Below are positions 1 through 8,634 of a DNA stretch of 8,634 nucleotides, piece by piece. Position 1 is the first letter of the stretch. Each line of letters begins with the position of its first letter. This stretch comes from Chlorokybus atmophyticus. Lineage: Eukaryota > Plantae > Mesostigma and Chlorokybus algae. The position numbers and the translations under genes are program-made. The stretch covers positions 1-8,634 of the forward strand of contig RHPI01001178.1 of NCBI GenBank assembly GCA_009103225.1, in the 5' to 3' direction. The notes under the pieces are model-generated. The model was not told the DNA's origin, searched no databases, and was given only the letters and a program-made list of their open reading frames with translations.

Positions 1-868
1 GAGTTCGGCACATACACGCTTGCGGATGTCTTCAAGGTGGCCGAGACGGCAGAAATTCAGCATGAGTACCTCAAGAACATTGACCAGCAGCGTTGGGGGT
101 TGAAGTTGCTTGAGATTTTGGAGGAGAAGAGCTCTTCCAAGTCCGCGGCGAGATCGGCGGCAAGCAAGGCAGCTGGTGGGAAGCCGAAGGAGTTCAAGCA
201 CGCCAACAACGCGGTTGTGAAAGGTGTGTCGGGTGCCAAATGCTGGTCGTGTGACGAGCAAGGCCATATTGCAAGGGATTGTGGGAAAGGCAAGAAGGTG
301 GTGTGCTCTCATTGCAAGAAGGGCGGGCATGTTGATGCCAAGTGTTGGAGTAAGCATCCGGAGCTGCGTCCACAACAAGGAGGGGCAGTCGGAGCTCACT
401 CGAGTGTGAGAGCGGAGCCATCAATGTCGGAGGTGACAAAGGCATTGGCGGCAATGCAATCGGAGTATGCATCGTTGAAGAGCATGCTCGAGCGAGGGAA
501 ATGGCCCGAGAGAGGAGCGGAGGATAAGCCAAGCAGCTCCGGAGGTTACCTCGCGTATAGTGCGCTCTCCGGAGGCACTAAGGTGGCAGCGGTTGCGACG
601 ACGAGAGCGTCGGCACGCCGAAACGCTGCACCAGCTCCCCCGACTAGGATGGTTGAGGAGGAGGCCGCGCCCGTCCGCGAGGAGGGTGTGGATCATGATA
701 GGATGCGGGCACCAGCTGCACGCATGCCTATGTCATTTAAGTTGCTGCCAACAACCCCGTTGGAGCAAGAGAGTTCGCGCTCGGAGGGTGCGAAAGTGCA
801 GCCGACTGCTACGGCAACGGCGCGACATGATGTCGGCATCGGTGGCGGTGGTGAGCACAAGAGAGTGG
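1..868 (+). CDS. gag: Gag C-terminal part (end of capsid, nucleocapsid, downstream spacer), first copy; open at the 5' window edge and interrupted by the N gap
   Basis: Frame 1 is open from base 1 (EFGTYTLADVFKVAETAEIQHEYL...), so the GTG at 37 is not the real start. It contains two zinc knuckles and has no stop before the gap at 869. Confidence 0.85.
141..868 (+). repeat. Duplicated segment, copy A (copy B at 1180-1918)
   Basis: Manual alignment of 141-868 with 1180-1918 gives about 27 substitutions in 728 nt (about 96% identity) plus an 11-nt insertion in copy B. Confidence 0.95.
241..345 (+). other. Two tandem CCHC zinc knuckles (nucleocapsid), copy 1
   Basis: CWSCDEQGHIARDC (241-282) and CSHCKKGGHVDAKC (304-345) both match CX2CX4HX4C. 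Confidence 0.95.
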
Positions 869-1179
869 NNNNNNNNNNNNNNNNNNNNNNNNNNNNNNNN
901 NNNNNNNNNNNNNNNNNNNNNNNNNNNNNNNNNNNNNNNNNNNNNNNNNNNNNNNNNNNNNNNNNNNNNNNNNNNNNNNNNNNNNNNNNNNNNNNNNNNN
1001 NNNNNNNNNNNNNNNNNNNNNNNNNNNNNNNNNNNNNNNNNNNNNNNNNNNNNNNNNNNNNNNNNNNNNNNNNNNNNNNNNNNNNNNNNNNNNNNNNNNN
1101 NNNNNNNNNNNNNNNNNNNNNNNNNNNNNNNNNNNNNNNNNNNNNNNNNNNNNNNNNNNNNNNNNNNNNNNNNNNNNNN
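869..1179. other. Assembly gap (311 N)
   Basis: Run of N from 869 to 1179. Confidence 0.99.
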
Positions 1180-1918
1180 GCCCGCGGCGACATCGGCGGC
1201 AAGCAAGGCAACTGGTGGGAAGCCGAAGGAGTTCAAGCACGCCAACAACGCGGTTGTGGAAGGTGTGTCGGGTGCCAAATGCTGGTCGTGTGGCGAGCAA
1301 GGCCATATTGCAAGGGATTGTGGCAAAGGCAAAAAGGTGGTGTGCTCTCATTGCAAGAAGGGTGGGCATGTCGATGCCAAGTGTTGGAGTAAGCATCCGG
1401 AGCTGCGTCCACAACAAGGAGGGGCAGTCGGAGCTCACTCGAGTGTGAGAGCGGAGCCATCAATGTCGGAGGTGACAAAGGCATTGGCGGCAATGCAATC
1501 GGAGTATGCATCGTTGAAGAGCATGCTCGAACGAGGGAAATGGCCCGAGAGAGGACTCCGCTCGGAGCGGAGGATAAGCCAAGCAGCTCCGGAGGCTACC
1601 TCGCGTATAGTGCGCTTCACGAAGGCACTAAGGTGGCAGCGGTTGCGACGACGAGAGCGTCGGCACGCCAAAACGCTGCACCAGCTCCCCCGACTAGGAT
1701 GGTTGAGGAGGAGGCCGCGCCCGTCCGCGAGGAGGGCGTGGATCATGATAGGATACGAGCACCAGCTGCACGCATGCCTATTTCATTCAAGTTGCTGCCA
1801 ACAACCCCGTTGGAGCAAGAGAGTTCGCGCTCGGAGGGTGCGAAAATGCAGCCGACCACTACGGCAACGGCGCAACATGATGTCGGCGTCAGTGGCGGTG
1901 GTGAGCACAAGAGAGTGG
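1180..1918 (+). repeat. Duplicated segment, copy B (copy A at 141-868)
   Basis: Offset from copy A is 1039 nt before the 11-nt insertion at 1556-1566 and 1050 nt after it. Confidence 0.95.
1280..1384 (+). other. Two tandem CCHC zinc knuckles, copy 2
   Basis: CWSCGEQGHIARDC and CSHCKKGGHVDAKC. Confidence 0.95.
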
Positions 1919-2414
1919 AGGAGCTGCTACAAATGTGTGTAAAGCTTCTTGAGGGTGCCAAGATGCTTTCCCAACAGCCCGCAACTCAAGCCAATGAAGA
2001 AAACTTGGGGTTGACGGCGCCGTTGGAGAGCGTTGCGGCGGAGCTGGTCGGGCAGCCGCTTGTTCGCTTGAAGGACCTTGGAGTCAGCAAGGAACACGTG
2101 GTGGAGCTGTTGCAAAGTGCTCTAGACACCAAAGACTCGCCTCGACAAAGTCTCATGATCATGTGAGCAAGTCTCATGAAGATATGGTGGCGCAAACAGG
2201 CCATATGGCTGCGCGCACGGAGCTGGCGGCGTCGGAGGGGTCGGCGTCGGCGTCGAGTTCTCTCACTCAGCTTGGAGACAAGCTAGAGGAAGGTGTGGGG
2301 AGTGTAGGAGGGATGTTGGCACAGCTTCCCGCCACTCGGCCGGCCTTGAGGCAAAAGATATCGCCAAATGTGGCGATGGTGGACAACCGAGGGGGGCACA
2401 TCAGCCTAAATGGC

Positions 2415-2720
2415 TTCGTGCCGGATGTTGTCTTGGTGGATACAGGTGCCCAACCTGTCATTTTGGGTGCTAGAGCTGTCAAAGGGATGGGCCTCAGCCC
2501 CAAGGAGTGGGAGCCATGCCCGGTCATGATCAATACCTCGGCGGGAACCGTAGAGGCCGTGTGTGGCATAACGGTGCAGCCAGTGGACATATGCTTGACT
2601 GCGTTGGGAGGTGCTACCACGACCTTCAAGCTTCGATGCCTCATCACGGATGCAAAGGGGTATGATGTGCTGCTCGAACAAGACTTCTTGTTCCCCGTCG
2701 GCGGCGGCGTTGACAATTGG
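2415..2720 (+). other. Retropepsin-type aspartic protease domain
   Basis: Active-site VVLVDTGAQ (DTG at 2439-2447). The C-terminal YDVLLEQDFL corresponds to the usual D-h-h-L-G-x-D-F-L motif, with E in place of G at 2676-2678. Domain limits are approximate. Confidence 0.9.
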
Positions 2721-3170
2721 ATTGAGCAAGGGTTCTTTCGGCCGCATTGGCGTGTGGGAGGAGGTGAGAAGGCCTACTTTCCGTTGAGCATCACGCAAGG
2801 GGGTGTTGAGAGGTCTCCAACATCCGCATCTGCTGTTTGGGCGTGCTTGAGTCGCTGTTCAGTCAAGGGATGGCTTGGTGACAGCACCGACATGTACTAT
2901 GACCATGTGGAGGAGGGGGAGAGTGTCTCCACGCACATAGAGGAGGGGAGACCTCCGGAGCTGGTCTATATGGCTCAAACTCAGTCGCAAGAGCTGGAAA
3001 TGGCTGCACAACACCGTGCTCAGCGGCAACAAGAGGCTCGAGACAAGGTTAGCCAAGCATGGATGAAGGATGTGATGGCATTGGAGCCGCCGTTGCTGCC
3101 CGAGGGTGTGAGAGCTGTTCATCCGCCTATCAACTACAACACCATCGAGTGGAAGGTGCCCGAAAATGGT

Positions 3171-4112
3171 GTCGTGATGGTGGAGCTGTTTGGTGGCATT
3201 GCAAGTGGGCTTGCGGCCGCGTTGAATGCCGGCATCAAGGTGCGGCGCTACGTCTATGTGGACCCTTCGCCAATGGCACAACATCATGTGAGGATTTTGT
3301 TGAAGAAGTATCCAGATCTGCTACATGAGGGTGCGGTGAAGGGCTTTCAAAGCACATGGCCGCAAGACATTTGCTTGGTGGGGCCACATCATCTCGCGGC
3401 AATCGGCCATGTGGATTTGCTTGTAGCGGGGTGGGAATGCCAAGGGCATTCACGGGCTGGTCATGGCAAGGGATTGATGGATACGCGCTCGTCATTGTTT
3501 TGGGAGTTGGTGCGCGTCATCAACATGATTCAGCAAGGCCAAGAGCAGCCCATGGCGTACATCATTGAGAACGTACCAGCTGAAGACGACAAGCGCAAGC
3601 GCGTGCGAGAGGACTATCAGCTGGTGAGACATGTGCTAGGTCATGAGCTGGTCATGGATGCCGCACGGCATGGTTCGCGCGCGCATCGGCTGCGTGTGAA
3701 GTGGACAAACCTCGCGCCGGTTGAGTTGCTTCGCACGGTGCAGCAAGAGTACTCTAGACCGCAAGGTTTGACAATCAACCAAGTGTTGGAGCATGGGCGC
3801 ACGGCACAACAGGTCAGCAAGGCTGATCGGCCGCCTCAGGAGGTGGTGAACCAGGTTGGACACGACATGGCGGCGTTGCCGACATTGGTAACATACCCAT
3901 GCTCTTATGCATTCCGCAAGGGAGGGCCAGGGCTGATGTGGGACTCACGAAACAGCAGGTTGGAAGAGCCAACAGCTGGTGAGCGCGAGCGTGCGATGGT
4001 GTTCTTGTCCGGTGCAACAGCGGCGCCATGACAAAGTGAATAACAGCGCCGAGTGCTGCTAGGACAAGCCATGGACCAGAATAGCATGGTGTGGCTTATG
4101 GTTGTCTGCTTG
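3171..4112 (+). other. C5-cytosine DNA methyltransferase catalytic domain, DNMT3-like, in frame within Pol; interrupted by two stops before motif X
   Basis: Motif I VELFGGIASG (FGGIASG 3189-3209). Motif IV VDLLVAGWECQGHSRAG (Cys 3438-3440). Motif V region DTRSSLFWELVRVI. Motif VI YIIENV (ENV 3567-3575). Motif VIII MDAARHGSRAHRLRVKWTNL (3654-3713). Motif IX ERERAMVF. Motif X QRRVLLGQAM (4044-4073). All are in the canonical order. Confidence 0.93.
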
Positions 4113-4466
4113 GCGGCACAAGAGTTGGTGGCAAACATCATGCCGATGCGACAGCAAGCGCGTCGGGAGCCTGCGTCTCTGTCGAGGGTGTGGGAGCATG
4201 ATGTACATCATGAGGAGAGTAAGGGGGTGTCTTTTTCGCCTGTGACAGCTGCAAGTGGCAAGAAAGCGGCTGTGGATGGTGCCTTGAAGCAGGAGAAGGC
4301 CACCGACCGGCCCATGGAGTGGTGTATAGGCGAGCATGTGACACCAAATGAGCGTGAGTGGCTTGAGGCATTACTGGAGCGTAAGCGTGACTGCTTCGCC
4401 TACTCTACCAAGGAGTTGGGAGTCTGCAACTTCTACACAATGGACATTGAGTTGACCTCTCCTGAG

Positions 4467-5090
4467 CCCATCTTTCGTCGGCAGTATCGGCTGAGCAAGG
4501 TGGAGAAGGAGTTTGTGGCAGAGAAGTGTGCGGACTTGTTGGAGGCCGGACTCATTGAGGAGTCAACCTCGGACTTCGCGGCGGCGACAGTGTTGCCGTT
4601 GAAGAAGGATGCACAGGGAAACTGGACCTCAAGGAGGATGTGTGGTGACTATCGGCCATTGAATGAGAAGACCAAAGCTGATCGGTACCCTATGCCTATC
4701 CCTGAGGCCATCTTTGATGACATCGGTGGTGCAAAGGTGTTCTCCATCGTGGACTTGAGGCAGGGTTTCCATCAGATAGCCATCAAGCCAGAGGACCGTG
4801 GCAAGACAGCGTTTTGGGGAGTGGATCAGCTCTACCTTTGAAAGGTCATGCCGTTAGGCTTGATGAATGCACCTGTGAAGTTCCAGCGTGTGATGGACCG
4901 TGTGCTTCGTGGTCTACCCTTTGCACGGTGCTACATCGATGACATATTGGTGTTTAGCCACACGATGGAGGAGCATCTTGTACACTTGGAGCGCGTGTTC
5001 GAGCGCGTGCGCGAGAGCGGCATGAGGTGTCACCCGGAGAAGTGCTTGTTCGGAGCTGATCACATCCCTTATCTCGGCCATGAGATAGTG
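4467..5090 (+). other. Reverse transcriptase domain (one internal stop at 4839-4841)
   Basis: PIFRRQYRLS, RMCGDYRPLN, DRYPMP, FSIVDLRQGFHQI, KTAF, LYL*KVMPLGLMNAP, catalytic YIDD at 4932-4943, and YLGH. Confidence 0.97.
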
Positions 5091-5363
5091 CCGGATGGCG
5101 TCCGTGTGCAGCAAGCAAAGGTGGATGCCTTGGTGCAAGTGCCTGCACCGACAGACATTAGCCGACTACGGGCGTTTCTCGGCTTGGCGAACTACTATCG
5201 GAGGTTCGTGGAGGGGTATAGCAAGATTGCAAAGCCCTCGAACGAGTTGTTGAAGAAGGACAAGGCCTGGTGCTGGTTGGAGGAGTGCCAACGTGCCTTT
5301 GAGCTTCTCAAGGAGAAGCTATGCACCGCGCCGGTGTTGAGACGGGCGGACTACAACCGTCCC

Positions 5364-5723
5364 TTCATCCTACACACGGATTGGAGCCGGTTGGGCATTG
5401 GGGCCGTGTTGTGTCAACATGACGACAACGGGAAGGAGTACGTGGTCGCATACGGCAGCCGAAGCAACAACAACGCTGAGGCGAACTACAGCTCCTACGA
5501 GGGGGAGTGTTTGGCAGTAGTTTGGGCCATTGTTCACTTCAGACCGTTCCTCTATGGCCGTCCCTTCACACTTATCACCGACCATCAGCCCTTGAAGTGG
5601 TTGATGACCAATGACAAGCTCACAGGGAAGCATGCCAGGTGGGCGCTCATACTACAGGAGTATGAGTTTAAGATTGAACACCGAGCTGGTGTTGACAACA
5701 TGGACGCGGATGGGCTGAGTAGG
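5364..5723 (+). other. RNase H domain (Ty3/Gypsy type)
   Basis: FILHTDWSRLGIGAVLCQ, NYSSYEGECLAVVW, FTLITDHQPLKWL, DADGLSR. Confidence 0.95.
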
Positions 5724-6139
5724 AACCCTAACCCTTAATTGTTGGATGAGAGTGAGGCGAGGCATGACTATGGCATGCCCGTGGCTGGGTTTTTGGCCTA
5801 CCGTGTGGCCTCTTTGCTGGTGTTGGCGGGTTCGGTGGAAGCATGCGCATCCACGCGCGCAAACGCAGCTGAAGAGAGCGACAATGATGGTGCGATGCCG
5901 CCTTTGGAGGCTGCACCAGCCCCAACGGTTAATGACATTGAAGGGGAGGAAGCCGAGGCTTCAAAGGACATTTGGAGGGATGAGCAAGTGCTTGCTCACC
6001 TCAAGACCGGGCTGTTCCTGGTTGCAGCACGGCGACGCGAGATCGCGTGTGGCAACGCGCGCAACGCTATCGGTGGGAGGGAGACCACCTTGTGCGCTTG
6101 ATGCCGGATGGTGGTGTGAGGACTGTGCCTCAACCACAT

Positions 6140-7060
6140 GAGAGGAAGCCACTTGTGGAGCTGCTCCATGAGAAGATGGGCCACTTTGGTGTCAAGAGGA
6201 CACTTGGGCTCGTGCAATCAGCATATTGGTGGGCTGGCATGCAGTCTACCGTGGCGGGAGTTGTTGCAAGTTGTGTGGAGTGCGACAGGGTGAAGGCAAG
6301 CTTCAATACCAAGCACCCACAGCTGCACCCTCTGCCTATCCAAGGACTATTCTATCGGTGGAGCCTAGATTTGGCCGGAGATCTACCAGTCAGCAAGAGA
6401 GGCAACCGCTATGTGCTCGTGATGATAGAGCACTTTTCAAAGTGCGTCGAGGTCGTGGCGCTGCCATCGAAGGAGAGCAAGTTTGTAGCTGAAGCTTTCC
6501 TTGACCAAGTACTGAGCAGATTCGGTGCTTGTGCTGAGGTTCTCACTGACCAAGGCACCGAGTTTCGTGGCCAGTTCGATGGCTTGTTGGCGCAAGCCTT
6601 CATCGACCATCGAAGGACTTCCGGTGACCATCCTCAAGCCGATGGGCTTCCTGAGAGAATGGTACAGGTGGTGAAGAAGGGGCTTCGCAAGTACTGTCTC
6701 AACCACAACAAGAGAGACTGGGACTTGGCGTTGCCATGGTTGGCGATGGGCTATCGCCTGACGCGGCAGGCTGCGATGAGCTCATACAGCCCCTACTTTT
6801 TGTTGTATGGGAGAGAGCCTATACTGCCAACATCAATCCGGAGACAGGTTGAGCAGGAGCTTGACTTGGAGGATCCCACTGTGTGGGAGAAGGAGATGGC
6901 GAAGCGTGCGGAGCTGTTTCGGCGTGTGATGCCAATCGCACTTGGCAACTTGCAAGTGGCGCAACACCGCGACACGTTGCGCTATGCCAGGGTGAGGAGT
7001 GGCTTCTACAAGCCAAGACTGCAGAAGTTTCAGCCAGGTGACTTTGTCTTCCTGCAGAGA
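6140..7060 (+). other. Integrase: HHCC zinc-binding domain, DDE catalytic core and GPY/F-like region
   Basis: H6167, H6182, C6272 and C6281 form the HHCC motif. Catalytic WSLD (D 6368), VLTDQG (D 6548) and DGLPE (E 6653). Also YFLLYGREP and KFQPGDFVFL. Limits are approximate. Confidence 0.95.
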
Positions 7061-7255
7061 AAGACCAAGGACACGCTGGATACGAGTGCGAGTCGCACCA
7101 TCCTTCGTGTGAAGAGGGACGACGGTGTGTTGTTGTTGGAGGGAGCTGATGCCAGGACCACCAAGGAGCACATGAAGAGCTGCGCTCCTTGCCATCTGCC
7201 AAACGTGGATGACAGTGTGGATCCGGCTCTGGCAATACCAGATGTGGGTCACCGT

Positions 7256-7390
7256 TGTGAACGGTGTGGCCGAGCAGAGGGCTGGGACACCATGCTTCTA
7301 TGCGACAGGTGTGTTGCCGGTTGGCACATGGAGTGCCTTCGTCCACCACTTGAGGAGATCCCTGATGGAGCATGGTACTGTCCGGCGTGT
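7256..7390 (+). other. PHD finger at the integrase C-terminus
   Basis: CERC...MLLCDRC..GWHMECLRPPLEEIPDGAWYCPAC gives a complete C4-H-C3 pattern with the typical CL-x-PPL-x-x-hP-x-G-x-W-x-CP-x-C second half. It is in frame with integrase and ends five codons before the stop at 7406-7408. Confidence 0.95.
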
Positions 7391-7455
7391 ACGAGGACTA
7401 CGCAATGAGCGTGTGAGTCAGCTGAAGGCGCACGAGGGCGTTGGCGCTCAGCTGC

Positions 7456-7868: not shown

Positions 7869-8130
7869 GAGAAGCCATAACTTACAGTTGGAGTGGCGGT
7901 TTGGCCGTGGGTTGGCGTCAAAAGATGCGTCTTGAAGTGTACTTGAAGAGGATAGGCTTGGATAAGCCTTTCCTAACCGTCTACCGTTACTTATCAACGC
8001 CATCATGACTGTTACTATGCTGGTGCAGACTGACAATTAGGGCAGTTGGAGAGTTGGTTGGGCTTGGGCTCAACGGTGGTATATAAGGCTTTGCTAGCTT
8101 GTTTCCTAGTTTGGTTGGATGCAAGTTGGC
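7869..8130 (+). repeat. 262-nt duplicated segment, copy A (copy B at 8133-8394), flanking a single N
   Basis: Offset 264 nt. Four substitutions were found by eye (7890/8154, 7978/8242, 7984/8248, 7987/8251). Confidence 0.95.
8080..8086 (+). promoter_or_regulatory. Candidate TATA box in the putative LTR (repeated at 8344-8350 in the duplicate)
   Basis: TATATAA stands out in otherwise GC/GT-rich sequence and lies within the putative LTR. There is no transcription start data. Confidence 0.45.
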
Positions 8131-8132
8131 NC

Positions 8133-8394
8133 GAGAAGCCATAACTTACAGTTCGAGTGGCGGTTTGGCCGTGGGTTGGCGTCAAAAGATGCGTCTTGAA
8201 GTGTACTTGAAGAGGATAGGCTTGGATAAGCCTTTCCTAACTGTCTATCGATACTTATCAACGCCATCATGACTGTTACTATGCTGGTGCAGACTGACAA
8301 TTAGGGCAGTTGGAGAGTTGGTTGGGCTTGGGCTCAACGGTGGTATATAAGGCTTTGCTAGCTTGTTTCCTAGTTTGGTTGGATGCAAGTTGGC
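8133..8394 (+). repeat. 262-nt duplicated segment, copy B
   Basis: Starts two bases after the N at 8131 and matches 7869-8130. Confidence 0.95.
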
Positions 8395-8634
8395 CTACTG
8401 GAGTGCAAGCAACACCTTTGGCAAGAGGTTTTCGGCTGAGCGGATGCTTGTGCACATGCTTGCATGTATGGTGTGTGTGCACGTGTTCGTCGCTGTGCAT
8501 GAAGGGGTGTGTGTCACTGTTGCGACTTTGATGCACCATATGGGCTGCTTTAGCATGTACATTGAGTGAGGATTGAGTTTGGACTGCTCTACACGAGTGA
8601 ACGGCTGATTGCAAGTCAAGTTGTGGTCATCTTG

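What the first reader, a model, noticed from the sequence alone, without database searches (positions are those of the whole stretch)
3171..4112. DNMT3-like cytosine methyltransferase embedded in the Pol polyprotein between protease and reverse transcriptase
Seen: an ordered set of C5-MTase motifs in the same frame as PR upstream and RT downstream, with no intron-like break. Established: the segments resemble the animal DNMT3A catalytic domain as I recall it. The pairs are LFGGIASGL vs LFDGIATGL, GIKVRRY vs GIQVDRY, MDAARHGSRAHRLRVKWTNL vs IDAKEVSAAHRARYFWGNL, VLEHGRTA vs CLEHGRIA, ERERAMVF vs EMERVFGF, and QRRVLLGQAM vs RQRLLGRSW. Standard Ty3/Gypsy Pol has no such domain. Retrotransposon-borne DNMTs were reported in charophytes and dinoflagellates by de Mendoza et al. 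2018 (Nature Communications), so this may belong to that charophyte class; it would be new if the host or element lineage differs. Inference: the enzyme would be packaged in the virus-like particle and could methylate the element's own cDNA before integration.
Basis: partly seen in the sequence, partly recalled or inferred. Interest (0 to 1): 0.9.

Follow-up and report, generated by a model that had tools for sequence, protein, structure and literature searches.

The report
Retrotransposon carrying a DNMT3-like DNA methyltransferase
This is a broken copy of a green-algal Ty3/Gypsy retrotransposon whose pol gene carries its own DNMT3-type DNA cytosine methyltransferase. The kind was described in 2018 in the alga Klebsormidium, but here it proves to belong to a large, selected lineage found across green algae and a liverwort, with the enzyme at two different places in pol.

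Summary
Window 3120-4112 encodes a C5 cytosine methyltransferase domain in the pol frame, between protease and reverse transcriptase.

- **Domain identity:** PF00145 scores 41 bits against a cut-off of 22. The best solved relatives are DNMT3A/3C/3B. The AlphaFold model (pLDDT 95.9) matches only DNMT3 structures in its top 50.
- **State of this copy:** it is dead, with in-frame stops at 4029, 4041, 4839 and 5736, a frameshift between 5984 and 6099, and a Gly-to-Val change in motif IX.
- **Not a one-off:** contigs from many other copies cover the whole domain. The scan has noted this family dozens of times in this genome, which earlier notes call Chlorokybus.
- **Wider lineage:** 199 protein clusters match at E<1e-30, many of them intact polyproteins of 1500-3400 aa, with the catalytic Cys conserved. 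dN/dS on the DNMT is about 0.07.
- **Two layouts:** relatives are either PR-DNMT-RT-RH-INT(-PHD) (window, Closterium, Marchantia) or RT-RH-DNMT-INT-PHD (Haematococcus, Monoraphidium, Scenedesmus). DNMT and RT trees agree on the split, and the whole lineage is one Gypsy clade.
- **Verdict:** a new member of the published Gypsy-DNMT3 kind (de Mendoza 2018). The wide host range and the relocated domain were not found in print.
- **Open:** enzymatic activity and self-methylation of the cDNA remain untested.

The parts
37..868 (+). gag fragment (first copy) with CCHC zinc knuckles, cut by the N run
   Evidence: ORF 37-1392. PF00098 zf-CCHC at residues 68-82. Repeated at 1182-1863 with 95-97% identity.
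869..1179 (.). assembly gap (311 N)
1180..2166 (+). gag (second copy). The frame changes near 1540. It ends at stop 2164-2166, in a -1 relation to the pol frame.
   Evidence: ORFs 560-1942 and 1540-2166; repeats D1 and D2
2163..3119 (+). start of the pol frame with the aspartic protease (core about 2400-2690, DTG motif)
   Evidence: PF13975/PF13650 at residues 81-176 of ORF 2163-4031. phmmer matches to PR of relatives.
3120..4112 (+). DNMT3-like C5 cytosine methyltransferase domain.
- Motif I: 3186-3209.
- Motif IV (GWECQG): 3429-3446, catalytic Cys at 3438-3440.
- Motif VI (ENV): 3567-3575.
- Motif VIII: 3678-3710.
- Motif IX: 3981-4004, with Val where the family has Gly.
- In-frame stops: 4029-4031 and 4041-4043.
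- Motif X: about 4047-4076.
   Evidence: PF00145 E 2.1e-10. DNMT3A/3C/3B are the best PDB sequence hits. AF2 pLDDT 95.9. Foldseek top 50 are all DNMT3. Motif table. Family consensus across the stops.
4113..4559 (+). linker between DNMT and RT, with no recognised domain
4560..5090 (+). reverse transcriptase (YIDD box), broken by a stop at 4839-4841
   Evidence: PF00078 on both pieces; stop list
5274..5663 (+). RNase H domain of the Ty3/Gypsy type. A stop follows at 5736-5738.
   Evidence: PF17917 E 2.6e-39, PF17919 E 2.2e-36
5984..6099 (+). interval in which the reading frame shifts from frame 3 to frame 2
   Evidence: Stop maps of the frames. Contigs of other copies differ in length by four letters at 6017.
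6134..6619 (+). integrase (H2C2 zinc-binding domain plus DDE core)
   Evidence: PF17921 E 4.4e-15, PF00665 E 4.5e-10
7256..7390 (+). PHD finger at the C-terminus of the integrase ORF. It is a hallmark of the whole lineage.
   Evidence: PF00628 E 2.1e-9. Present in type A (P0212, P0263, L007) and in most type B relatives.
7869..8395 (.). 264-nt unit repeated twice in tandem, downstream of the coding region. It may be part of the element's terminal repeat system.

Best explanation
The window holds a decayed copy of a Ty3/Gypsy-type retrotransposon laid out gag - PR - DNMT - RT - RNase H - INT - PHD. The DNMT is a DNMT3-class C5 cytosine methyltransferase domain. It is a standard, purifying-selected module of a whole retrotransposon lineage of the green lineage, not an accident of this copy.

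Shown:
- domain identity, fold and class;
- presence in other copies of this genome and in all close relatives;
- conservation of catalytic residues, and low dN/dS in relatives;
- monophyly of the DNMT/PHD-bearing Gypsy lineage;
- two fixed positions of the DNMT in pol.

Inferred: in intact copies the enzyme is translated as part of Pol and stays with or next to the RT-RNase H module, the only neighbour it keeps in both layouts. There it would methylate the element's own newly made DNA, or the DNA at the integration site, de novo. The PHD finger on the integrase would read histone tails. This particular copy can make no enzyme.

The confidence given is for the identity and family status. The mechanistic part alone I put at about 0.4.
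For: Domain:
- PF00145 at 41 bits against a cut-off of 22.
- PDB phmmer: DNMT3A 1.6e-10, against HhaI 1e-3 and DRM 0.03.
- Family profile: DNMT3A 1.2e-25, 3B 1e-22, 3C 2e-22, DRM 2e-14, HhaI 8e-10, DNMT2 5e-7, DNMT1 not listed.
- AF2 pLDDT 95.9 and pTM 0.92. Foldseek top 50 are all DNMT3A/B/C, with TM 0.60-0.74.

Family trait:
- 164 and 121 contigs from two runs lie on 2163-7408 at 85-100% identity. All bins are covered and no joint removes the DNMT.
- 66 notes of the scan on this genome mention the same thing.
- 199 clusters at 50% identity match at E<1e-30, many of them 1500-3400 aa ORFs.
- Layouts: 57 type A and 151 type B proteins.

Selection:
- The Cys is invariant in 39 type A and 131 type B rows, and the ENV Glu is invariant.
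- 167 of 206 rows keep 8 key residues.
- DNMT identity to relatives (42-54%) is higher than that of PR (27-37%).
- dN/dS for P0198 against P0199: DNMT 0.07, RT 0.04, RH 0.06.

Phylogeny:
- DNMT tree: the A|B branch has SH-aLRT 100.
- RT-RH tree with 15 other Gypsy elements as outgroup: the lineage has support 100 and the B clade 99.

Published precedent: KnitGypsy-Dnmt3 (PMC5890265).
Against: - No enzymatic activity is shown for any member. The K. nitens domain gave no methylation in yeast; the authors call this inconclusive because DNMT3B also failed.
- The canonical Pro before the catalytic Cys is Glu here and in two thirds of the family.
- Motif X is weak.
- No RNA run was available, so expression is unknown.
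- The host name rests on earlier scan notes only.
- No cellular DNMT3 or K. nitens sequence could be put in the tree.
- The window shows no LTR pair.
Confidence: 0.85

Rival explanations
1. The domain is kept for something other than DNA methylation. It could be a catalytically silent DNA- or chromatin-binding module that tethers the pre-integration complex, or an RNA m5C methyltransferase acting on the element's RNA.
For: Glu replaces the canonical Pro before the catalytic Cys in 130 of 206 domains. Motif X is poorly conserved. KnitGypsy-Dnmt3 gave no DNA methylation in yeast. De Mendoza et al. raise RNA methylation for the LINE-borne DNMT.
Against: A pure binding role does not explain why the Cys, the ENV Glu, the motif I glycines and the motif VIII arginines are all invariant. 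A third of the family has the canonical Pro-Cys, and the two forms switch at least 18 times on the tree, as if they were equivalent. The closest structures are DNA enzymes, not DNMT2.
Confidence: 0.2
2. The DNMT acts mainly on host chromatin or on resident copies rather than on the cDNA. It might lay down CG methylation that mimics gene-body methylation, or it might slow the family's own transposition, which would benefit host and element.
For: De Mendoza et al. offer both ideas. A PHD reader on the same polyprotein suggests action on chromatin. CpG o/e is 0.78, with a TpG/CpA excess of 1.4 over the element.
Against: Nothing here separates this from cDNA methylation. In both layouts the DNMT keeps only RT-RNase H as a neighbour, which fits coupling to DNA synthesis better. 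The CpG figure has no genome baseline.
Confidence: 0.15
3. This lineage captured its DNMT independently of the published K. nitens elements, so it is only convergent with KnitGypsy-Dnmt3.
For: No K. nitens protein appeared by name among the hits. The paper describes the acquisition as occurring in the K. nitens lineage.
Against: The host group, element superfamily and DNMT class are the same, and motif X is weak in both. The lineage found here spans Chlorokybus, Closterium and Marchantia, which bracket Klebsormidium among streptophytes. Most database entries carry no name.
Confidence: 0.1
4. It is a one-off chimera: a host DNMT3 gene fragment, or an assembly join, placed inside this single copy.
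For: The window contains an N gap and a duplicated gag, so the assembly is imperfect here.
Against: The gap is 2 kb upstream. The domain is in frame with PR and RT. Other copies in two sequencing runs cover it. More than 200 relatives carry it.
Confidence: 0.01

Closest known systems
KnitGypsy-Dnmt3 of Klebsormidium nitens (de Mendoza et al. 2018, Nat Commun 9:1341, PMC5890265)
   Same: An intronless, non-rearranged DNMT3-like domain inside the Pol ORF of a Gypsy-type retrotransposon of a streptophyte alga. The catalytic motifs are conserved, motif X is weak, and the DNMT is under purifying selection.
   Different: - The host differs: Chlorokybus according to scan notes.
- Direct sequence comparison was not possible.
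- The paper does not mention a PHD finger (0 occurrences), hosts beyond K. nitens, or a second position of the DNMT in pol.
- Its DIRS-like A-coding-B-A-B repeat layout cannot be checked, because the window lacks the 5' end.
Cellular DNMT3A/3B/3C (animal de novo methyltransferases; PDB 6w89, 2qrv, 6u8p, 8tci)
   Same: The catalytic domain fold and the linear motif order I-X. These are the best sequence and structure matches.
   Different: Only about 21-25% identical. There are no PWWP or ADD domains. Glu stands in place of Pro before the catalytic Cys. The domain is embedded in a retrotransposon polyprotein.
SymbioDIRS-Dnmt3 of Symbiodinium (same paper)
   Same: A retrotransposon-borne DNMT3-class domain within Pol. 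Two structures with different domain orders coexist, which parallels the two layouts found here. De novo CG methylation was shown in yeast.
   Different: It is a DIRS element with a tyrosine recombinase rather than a Gypsy element with a DDE integrase. The host is a dinoflagellate, and the paper treats it as an independent capture.
Chromoviruses (Ty3/Gypsy elements with a chromodomain after the integrase)
   Same: A Ty3/Gypsy backbone with a histone-reader module fused to the C-terminus of the integrase.

Membership tests
C5 cytosine DNA methyltransferase (Pfam PF00145) | Profile match above the curated cut-off | tested here: met
   41 bits against a cut-off of 22, E 2.1e-10. Relatives score 20-46 bits.
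C5 cytosine DNA methyltransferase (Pfam PF00145) | Catalytic motifs: I (FxGxG), IV (Pro-Cys), VI (ENV), VIII (RxR), IX and X | tested here: inconclusive
   Motifs I, VI, VIII and IX and the catalytic Cys are present and family-invariant. The Pro of motif IV is Glu, as in 130 of 206 relatives. The motif IX Gly is Val in this copy. Motif X is weak and follows two stops.
C5 cytosine DNA methyltransferase (Pfam PF00145) | Methyltransferase fold | tested here: met
   AF2 pLDDT 95.9. Foldseek E 8e-16 to DNMT3A, TM about 0.7.
DNMT3 class | Closer to DNMT3 than to DNMT1, DNMT2, DRM or bacterial enzymes | tested here: met
   Profile against PDB: DNMT3A 1.2e-25, DRM 2e-14, HhaI 8e-10, DNMT2 5e-7, DNMT1 absent. 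Top 50 structural matches are all DNMT3.
DNMT3 class | Linear, not circularly permuted, motif order (unlike plant DRM) | tested here: met
   Motifs I-VIII and then IX-X align collinearly with DNMT3A.
DNMT3 class | Placement inside the DNMT3 clade in a tree that includes cellular DNMT1/2/3/5/DRM | not tested
   No cellular DNMT sequences could be obtained. For K. nitens elements this was shown in PMC5890265 Fig. 4a.
Ty3/Gypsy LTR retrotransposon | PR, RT, RNase H and DDE integrase in that order, with a Gypsy-type RT/RH | tested here: met
   PF13975, PF00078, PF17917/PF17919, PF17921 and PF00665. The RT-RH tree places the lineage among Gypsy elements.
Ty3/Gypsy LTR retrotransposon | Flanking long terminal repeats | tested here: not met
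   There is no repeat pair flanking the coding region in the window, which starts inside gag. Only a 264-nt tandem at 7869-8395 was found. The family is reported to have DIRS-like split repeats instead (scan note s1-078763).
Gypsy-DNMT3 retrotransposons (KnitGypsy-Dnmt3 kind) | DNMT3-like domain in frame within the Pol of a Gypsy element | tested here: met
Gypsy-DNMT3 retrotransposons (KnitGypsy-Dnmt3 kind) | DNMT is a conserved part of the element family, under purifying selection | tested here: met
Gypsy-DNMT3 retrotransposons (KnitGypsy-Dnmt3 kind) | Clusters with the K. nitens elements in DNMT and RT trees | not testable with these tools
   No K. nitens sequence was returned by name.
Gypsy-DNMT3 retrotransposons (KnitGypsy-Dnmt3 kind) | De novo cytosine methylation activity | not testable with these tools
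   It is also unproven for the K. nitens domain.

The most novel reading that the evidence does not exclude
The Gypsy lineage that carries both a DNMT3-type writer and a PHD reader stems from one ancient capture in the green lineage, not from an event within the K. nitens lineage. It then split into a streptophyte form (PR-DNMT-RT-RH-INT-PHD) and a chlorophyte form (RT-RH-DNMT-INT-PHD) by a single relocation of the DNMT within pol. It has persisted under selection ever since. That would make it one of the oldest and most widespread retrotransposon-borne epigenetic toolkits. It would also supply two natural experiments for what the enzyme does: the Glu-Cys versus Pro-Cys forms, and the two positions, both next to RT-RNase H.
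Probability: 0.4. Interest if true: 0.65.

Novelty: new member of a known kind. Interest (0 to 1): 0.45.

Why it matters
DNA methylation is the main weapon of hosts against transposons, so a transposon that carries its own de novo methyltransferase is a paradox whose function is still unknown.

This copy itself adds only a new host to a kind described in 2018. The relatives gathered here show more:
- The kind is not a curiosity of one alga. It is a large, selected lineage in streptophyte algae, a liverwort and chlorophytes.
- It always goes with a PHD finger.
- The enzyme sits on either side of the RT-RNase H module.

That gives many natural intact enzymes to test, and a concrete hypothesis to test: coupling of methylation to cDNA synthesis.

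Tried and rejected
- **Stops not repaired.** The pieces were searched apart, and 3120-4028 alone was enough for Pfam, PDB and folding.
- **K. nitens link not established.** I looked for K. nitens sequences through three homologue searches, the representative search, two cluster look-ups and the paper's supplements. None came back by name.
- **Host not confirmed.** An exact look-up of a window ORF found nothing, and the run names are coded. The host name Chlorokybus therefore rests on earlier scan notes.
- **Expression unknown.** No RNA run holds the stretch, which is not evidence of silence.
- **Stops at 4029 and 4041 in other copies.** Read laying lists only the 40 best-supported differences, so what other copies read at these two stops could not be seen.
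- **DNMT tree not rooted.** No cellular DNMT3 could be fetched. With outgroups, the RT tree leaves the type A lineages unresolved at the base, so the ancestral position of the DNMT is open.
- **Literature.** Searches for Chlorokybus, Marchantia or chlorophyte Gypsy-DNMT3 found no report. The library is incomplete, so this is weak evidence of novelty.
- **dN/dS.** P0060 against P0194 was uninformative because the sequences are identical over the shared part.
- **Rejected readings.** A bacterial Dcm-like origin is rejected, as is a one-off insertion.

Full report
**What is in the window.** The 8634-base window is almost entirely one retroelement on the + strand.
- A gag with CCHC knuckles occurs twice, at 143-813 and 1182-1863 (95-97% identical), on either side of a 311-N gap.
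- From 1998 a long frame opens. It reads protease (DTG; PF13975/PF13650), a C5 methyltransferase domain (PF00145), reverse transcriptase (PF00078, YIDD) and RNase H (PF17917/PF17919).
- After a frame change, it reads integrase (PF17921, PF00665) ending in a PHD finger (PF00628).
- The frame is broken by stops at 4029, 4041, 4839 and 5736, and by a shift from frame 3 to frame 2 between 5984 and 6099.
- Downstream lies a 264-nt unit repeated twice in tandem, at 7869-8395.
- No flanking LTR pair is in the window, which begins inside gag.

**Checking the observation.**
- Pfam PF00145 matches at E 2.1e-10, 41 bits against a gathering score of 22.
- phmmer of 3120-4028 against all solved structures ranks DNMT3A first (E 1.6e-10), then DNMT3C and DNMT3B. 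M.HhaI follows at 1e-3 and plant DRM at 0.03.
- The two stops are point changes with no indel. The family consensus TAAPGxxExxRxxxLGxxMD runs straight through them, so motif X follows in frame at about 4047-4076.
The domain begins near 3120.

**What class of enzyme.**
- A profile of 59 family domains gives DNMT3A 1.2e-25, DNMT3B 1e-22, DNMT3C 2e-22, DRM 2e-14 (partial, because DRM is permuted), HhaI 8e-10 and DNMT2 5e-7. DNMT1 is not listed.
- An AlphaFold2 model of the window's 303 residues, built with that alignment, has mean pLDDT 95.9 and pTM 0.92.
- Its 50 best Foldseek matches in the PDB are all DNMT3A, 3B or 3C, with E down to 8e-16 and TM 0.60-0.74.
- The motif order is linear, as in DNMT3 and unlike DRM.
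- A tree with cellular DNMTs could not be built, because none could be fetched.

**Is it a one-off?** No.
- Contigs of two public runs were laid on 2163-7408 at 85% identity or more. They gave 164 and 121 pieces, spread from over 99% to under 90% identity.
- They cover all 30 bins, and no joint removes the DNMT.
- Every contig that crosses 4837-4841 reads other letters than the window's stop.
- Contigs differ in length by four letters at 6017, inside the interval where the window changes frame. Some copies carry twelve more letters, in frame, at 3275.
- The scan's own index holds 66 notes on this genome with the words gypsy, methyltransferase and pol, one of them on a copy called intact (unchecked).
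- Earlier follow-up notes name the genome as Chlorokybus. I could not verify the host.

**The wider family.**
- An exhaustive HMMER search of 1.84 billion representatives found 199 clusters at E<1e-30 and 611 at E<1e-10. All 150 best hits score E<3e-36, and many are 1500-3400 residues long.
- Word-indexed searches added names: Closterium spp., Marchantia polymorpha, Haematococcus lacustris, Monoraphidium neglectum and Scenedesmus sp..
- I located the window's own PR, DNMT, RT, RH, INT and PHD segments in every fetched protein. Two layouts appear and never mix: type A, (gag-)PR-DNMT-RT-RH-INT(-PHD), in 57 proteins, and type B, RT-RH-DNMT-INT-PHD, in 151 proteins.
- The window is type A. Its nearest relative is P0207, from a metagenome contig with the same layout and a PHD ORF behind it (53% in the DNMT, 66-75% in RT and RH).
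- Named type A hosts are all streptophytes: Closterium and Marchantia, plus the window. Named type B hosts are all Chlorophyceae. That is three genera on each side, so the split is tentative.

**Phylogeny.**
- In a FastTree of 206 DNMT domains, the A/B label needs a single change.
- In an IQ-TREE (LG+C20 PMSF) of 66 domains, the branch separating A from B has SH-aLRT 100, and the window lies in A.
- The RT-RH tree has 61 lineage members and 15 other Gypsy elements. The outgroups are the nearest ones a search of the whole database returned.
- In that tree the DNMT/PHD-bearing lineage is one clade (100) and type B is one clade (99). The type A lineages are unresolved at its base.
- The only DNMT-less protein inside is a truncated Haematococcus model.
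- Two PHD-bearing proteins in the A grade (P0351, P0353) show no DNMT.
- The simplest reading is one capture by an ancestor of this Gypsy lineage and one relocation of the domain within pol. Which position is ancestral is open.
- Domain reordering was also reported for the Symbiodinium DIRS-Dnmt3 elements.

**Selection.**
- The catalytic Cys is invariant in 39 type A and 131 type B rows. The ENV Glu, a motif I Gly and the two motif VIII Arg are also invariant or nearly so.
- 167 of 206 rows keep eight key residues.
- The window's DNMT is 42-54% identical to relatives. That is more than PR (27-37%) and somewhat less than RT, RH and INT.
- Between two intact type A relatives (P0198 and P0199), Nei-Gojobori dN/dS is 0.07 for the DNMT, 0.04 for RT, 0.06 for RH and 0.10 for gag. 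dS is close to saturation.
- The window's copy has lost the motif IX Gly (to Val), as expected of a dead copy.

**An oddity.** The residue before the catalytic Cys is the Pro of the Pro-Cys dipeptide in nearly all C5 methyltransferases (my own knowledge). Here it is Glu, as in 130 of 206 family domains. Pro is found in 65, and the two switch at least 18 times on the tree. I have no explanation.

**Mechanism.** What the enzyme does is not known for any Gypsy-DNMT3.
- De Mendoza et al. proposed that retrotransposon DNMTs methylate the newly reverse-transcribed DNA. They showed de novo CG methylation for the Symbiodinium DIRS enzymes.
- The K. nitens Gypsy enzyme gave none in yeast. They call this inconclusive, because human DNMT3B also failed.
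- The data here add three things: strong constraint on the catalytic residues, a constant partnership with a PHD finger on the integrase, and the fact that RT-RNase H is the DNMT's only constant neighbour in both layouts.
- I therefore favour methylation of the element's own new DNA, coupled to its synthesis, at about 40%.
- The rivals are a non-catalytic or RNA-directed role (about 20%) and action on host chromatin or resident copies (about 15%).
- CpG o/e over the element is 0.78, with TpG and CpA at 1.4. This is compatible with methylation but has no baseline.

**Comparison with what is known.**
- The kind was published in 2018 as KnitGypsy-Dnmt3, described as an acquisition in the K. nitens lineage. 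The survey behind it held one charophyte and five chlorophytes.
- Papers of 2025 and 2026 still cite it as the streptophyte Gypsy-DNMT3.
- I found no paper reporting it in Chlorokybus, Closterium, Marchantia or Chlorophyceae. None reports the PHD partnership together with the DNMT, or the second position in pol. The searchable library is incomplete, so this is weak evidence.

**Verdict.** The finding itself is a new member of a known kind, already seen many times by this scan in the same genome, and this copy is dead. The family-level picture is the part worth following up.

Noticed in passing
window 143-813 and 1182-1863, N run 869-1179: gag is present twice (95-97% identical) on either side of the assembly gap. 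This is either a scaffold join of two copies or a partial tandem duplication. The second gag also changes frame near 1540.
   Followed up: partly
window 7869-8395: A 264-nt unit is repeated twice in tandem (98% match, single N at 8131), downstream of the integrase-PHD ORF. It may belong to the split-repeat termini reported for this kind of element.
   Followed up: partly
window 1998-2166: The gag frame ends at 2164-2166 while the pol frame is already open from 1998, a -1 relation. Intact relatives (P0060, P0212) have gag and pol in one ORF. So this may be a mutation rather than programmed frameshifting.
   Followed up: no
window 3435-3440 and family alignment: Glu instead of the canonical Pro precedes the catalytic Cys. 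Across 206 family domains it is Glu in 130 and Pro in 65, with at least 18 switches on the tree, although the change needs two base substitutions.
   Followed up: partly
relatives P0057, P0074, P0097, P0240, P0059 versus P0060, P0212, L007: The same DNMT sits at two places in pol: after PR in type A and after RNase H in type B. Named hosts are streptophytes for A and Chlorophyceae for B.
   Followed up: yes
P0351, P0353: These are PHD-bearing Gypsy polyproteins that fall in the type A grade by RT, but show no detectable DNMT or PR in the 800 residues before RT. This could be a loss or a replacement of the module.
   Followed up: partly
P0004, P0055: Proteins named as Candidatus Obscuribacterales and Spirochaetia MAG proteins are pieces of this eukaryotic retrotransposon family. 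The contigs were probably mis-binned into bacterial genomes.
   Followed up: no
window 7256-7390: A PHD finger ends the integrase ORF. The same finger is found in most type B relatives and in several type A relatives, so writer and reader travel together in this lineage.
   Followed up: partly
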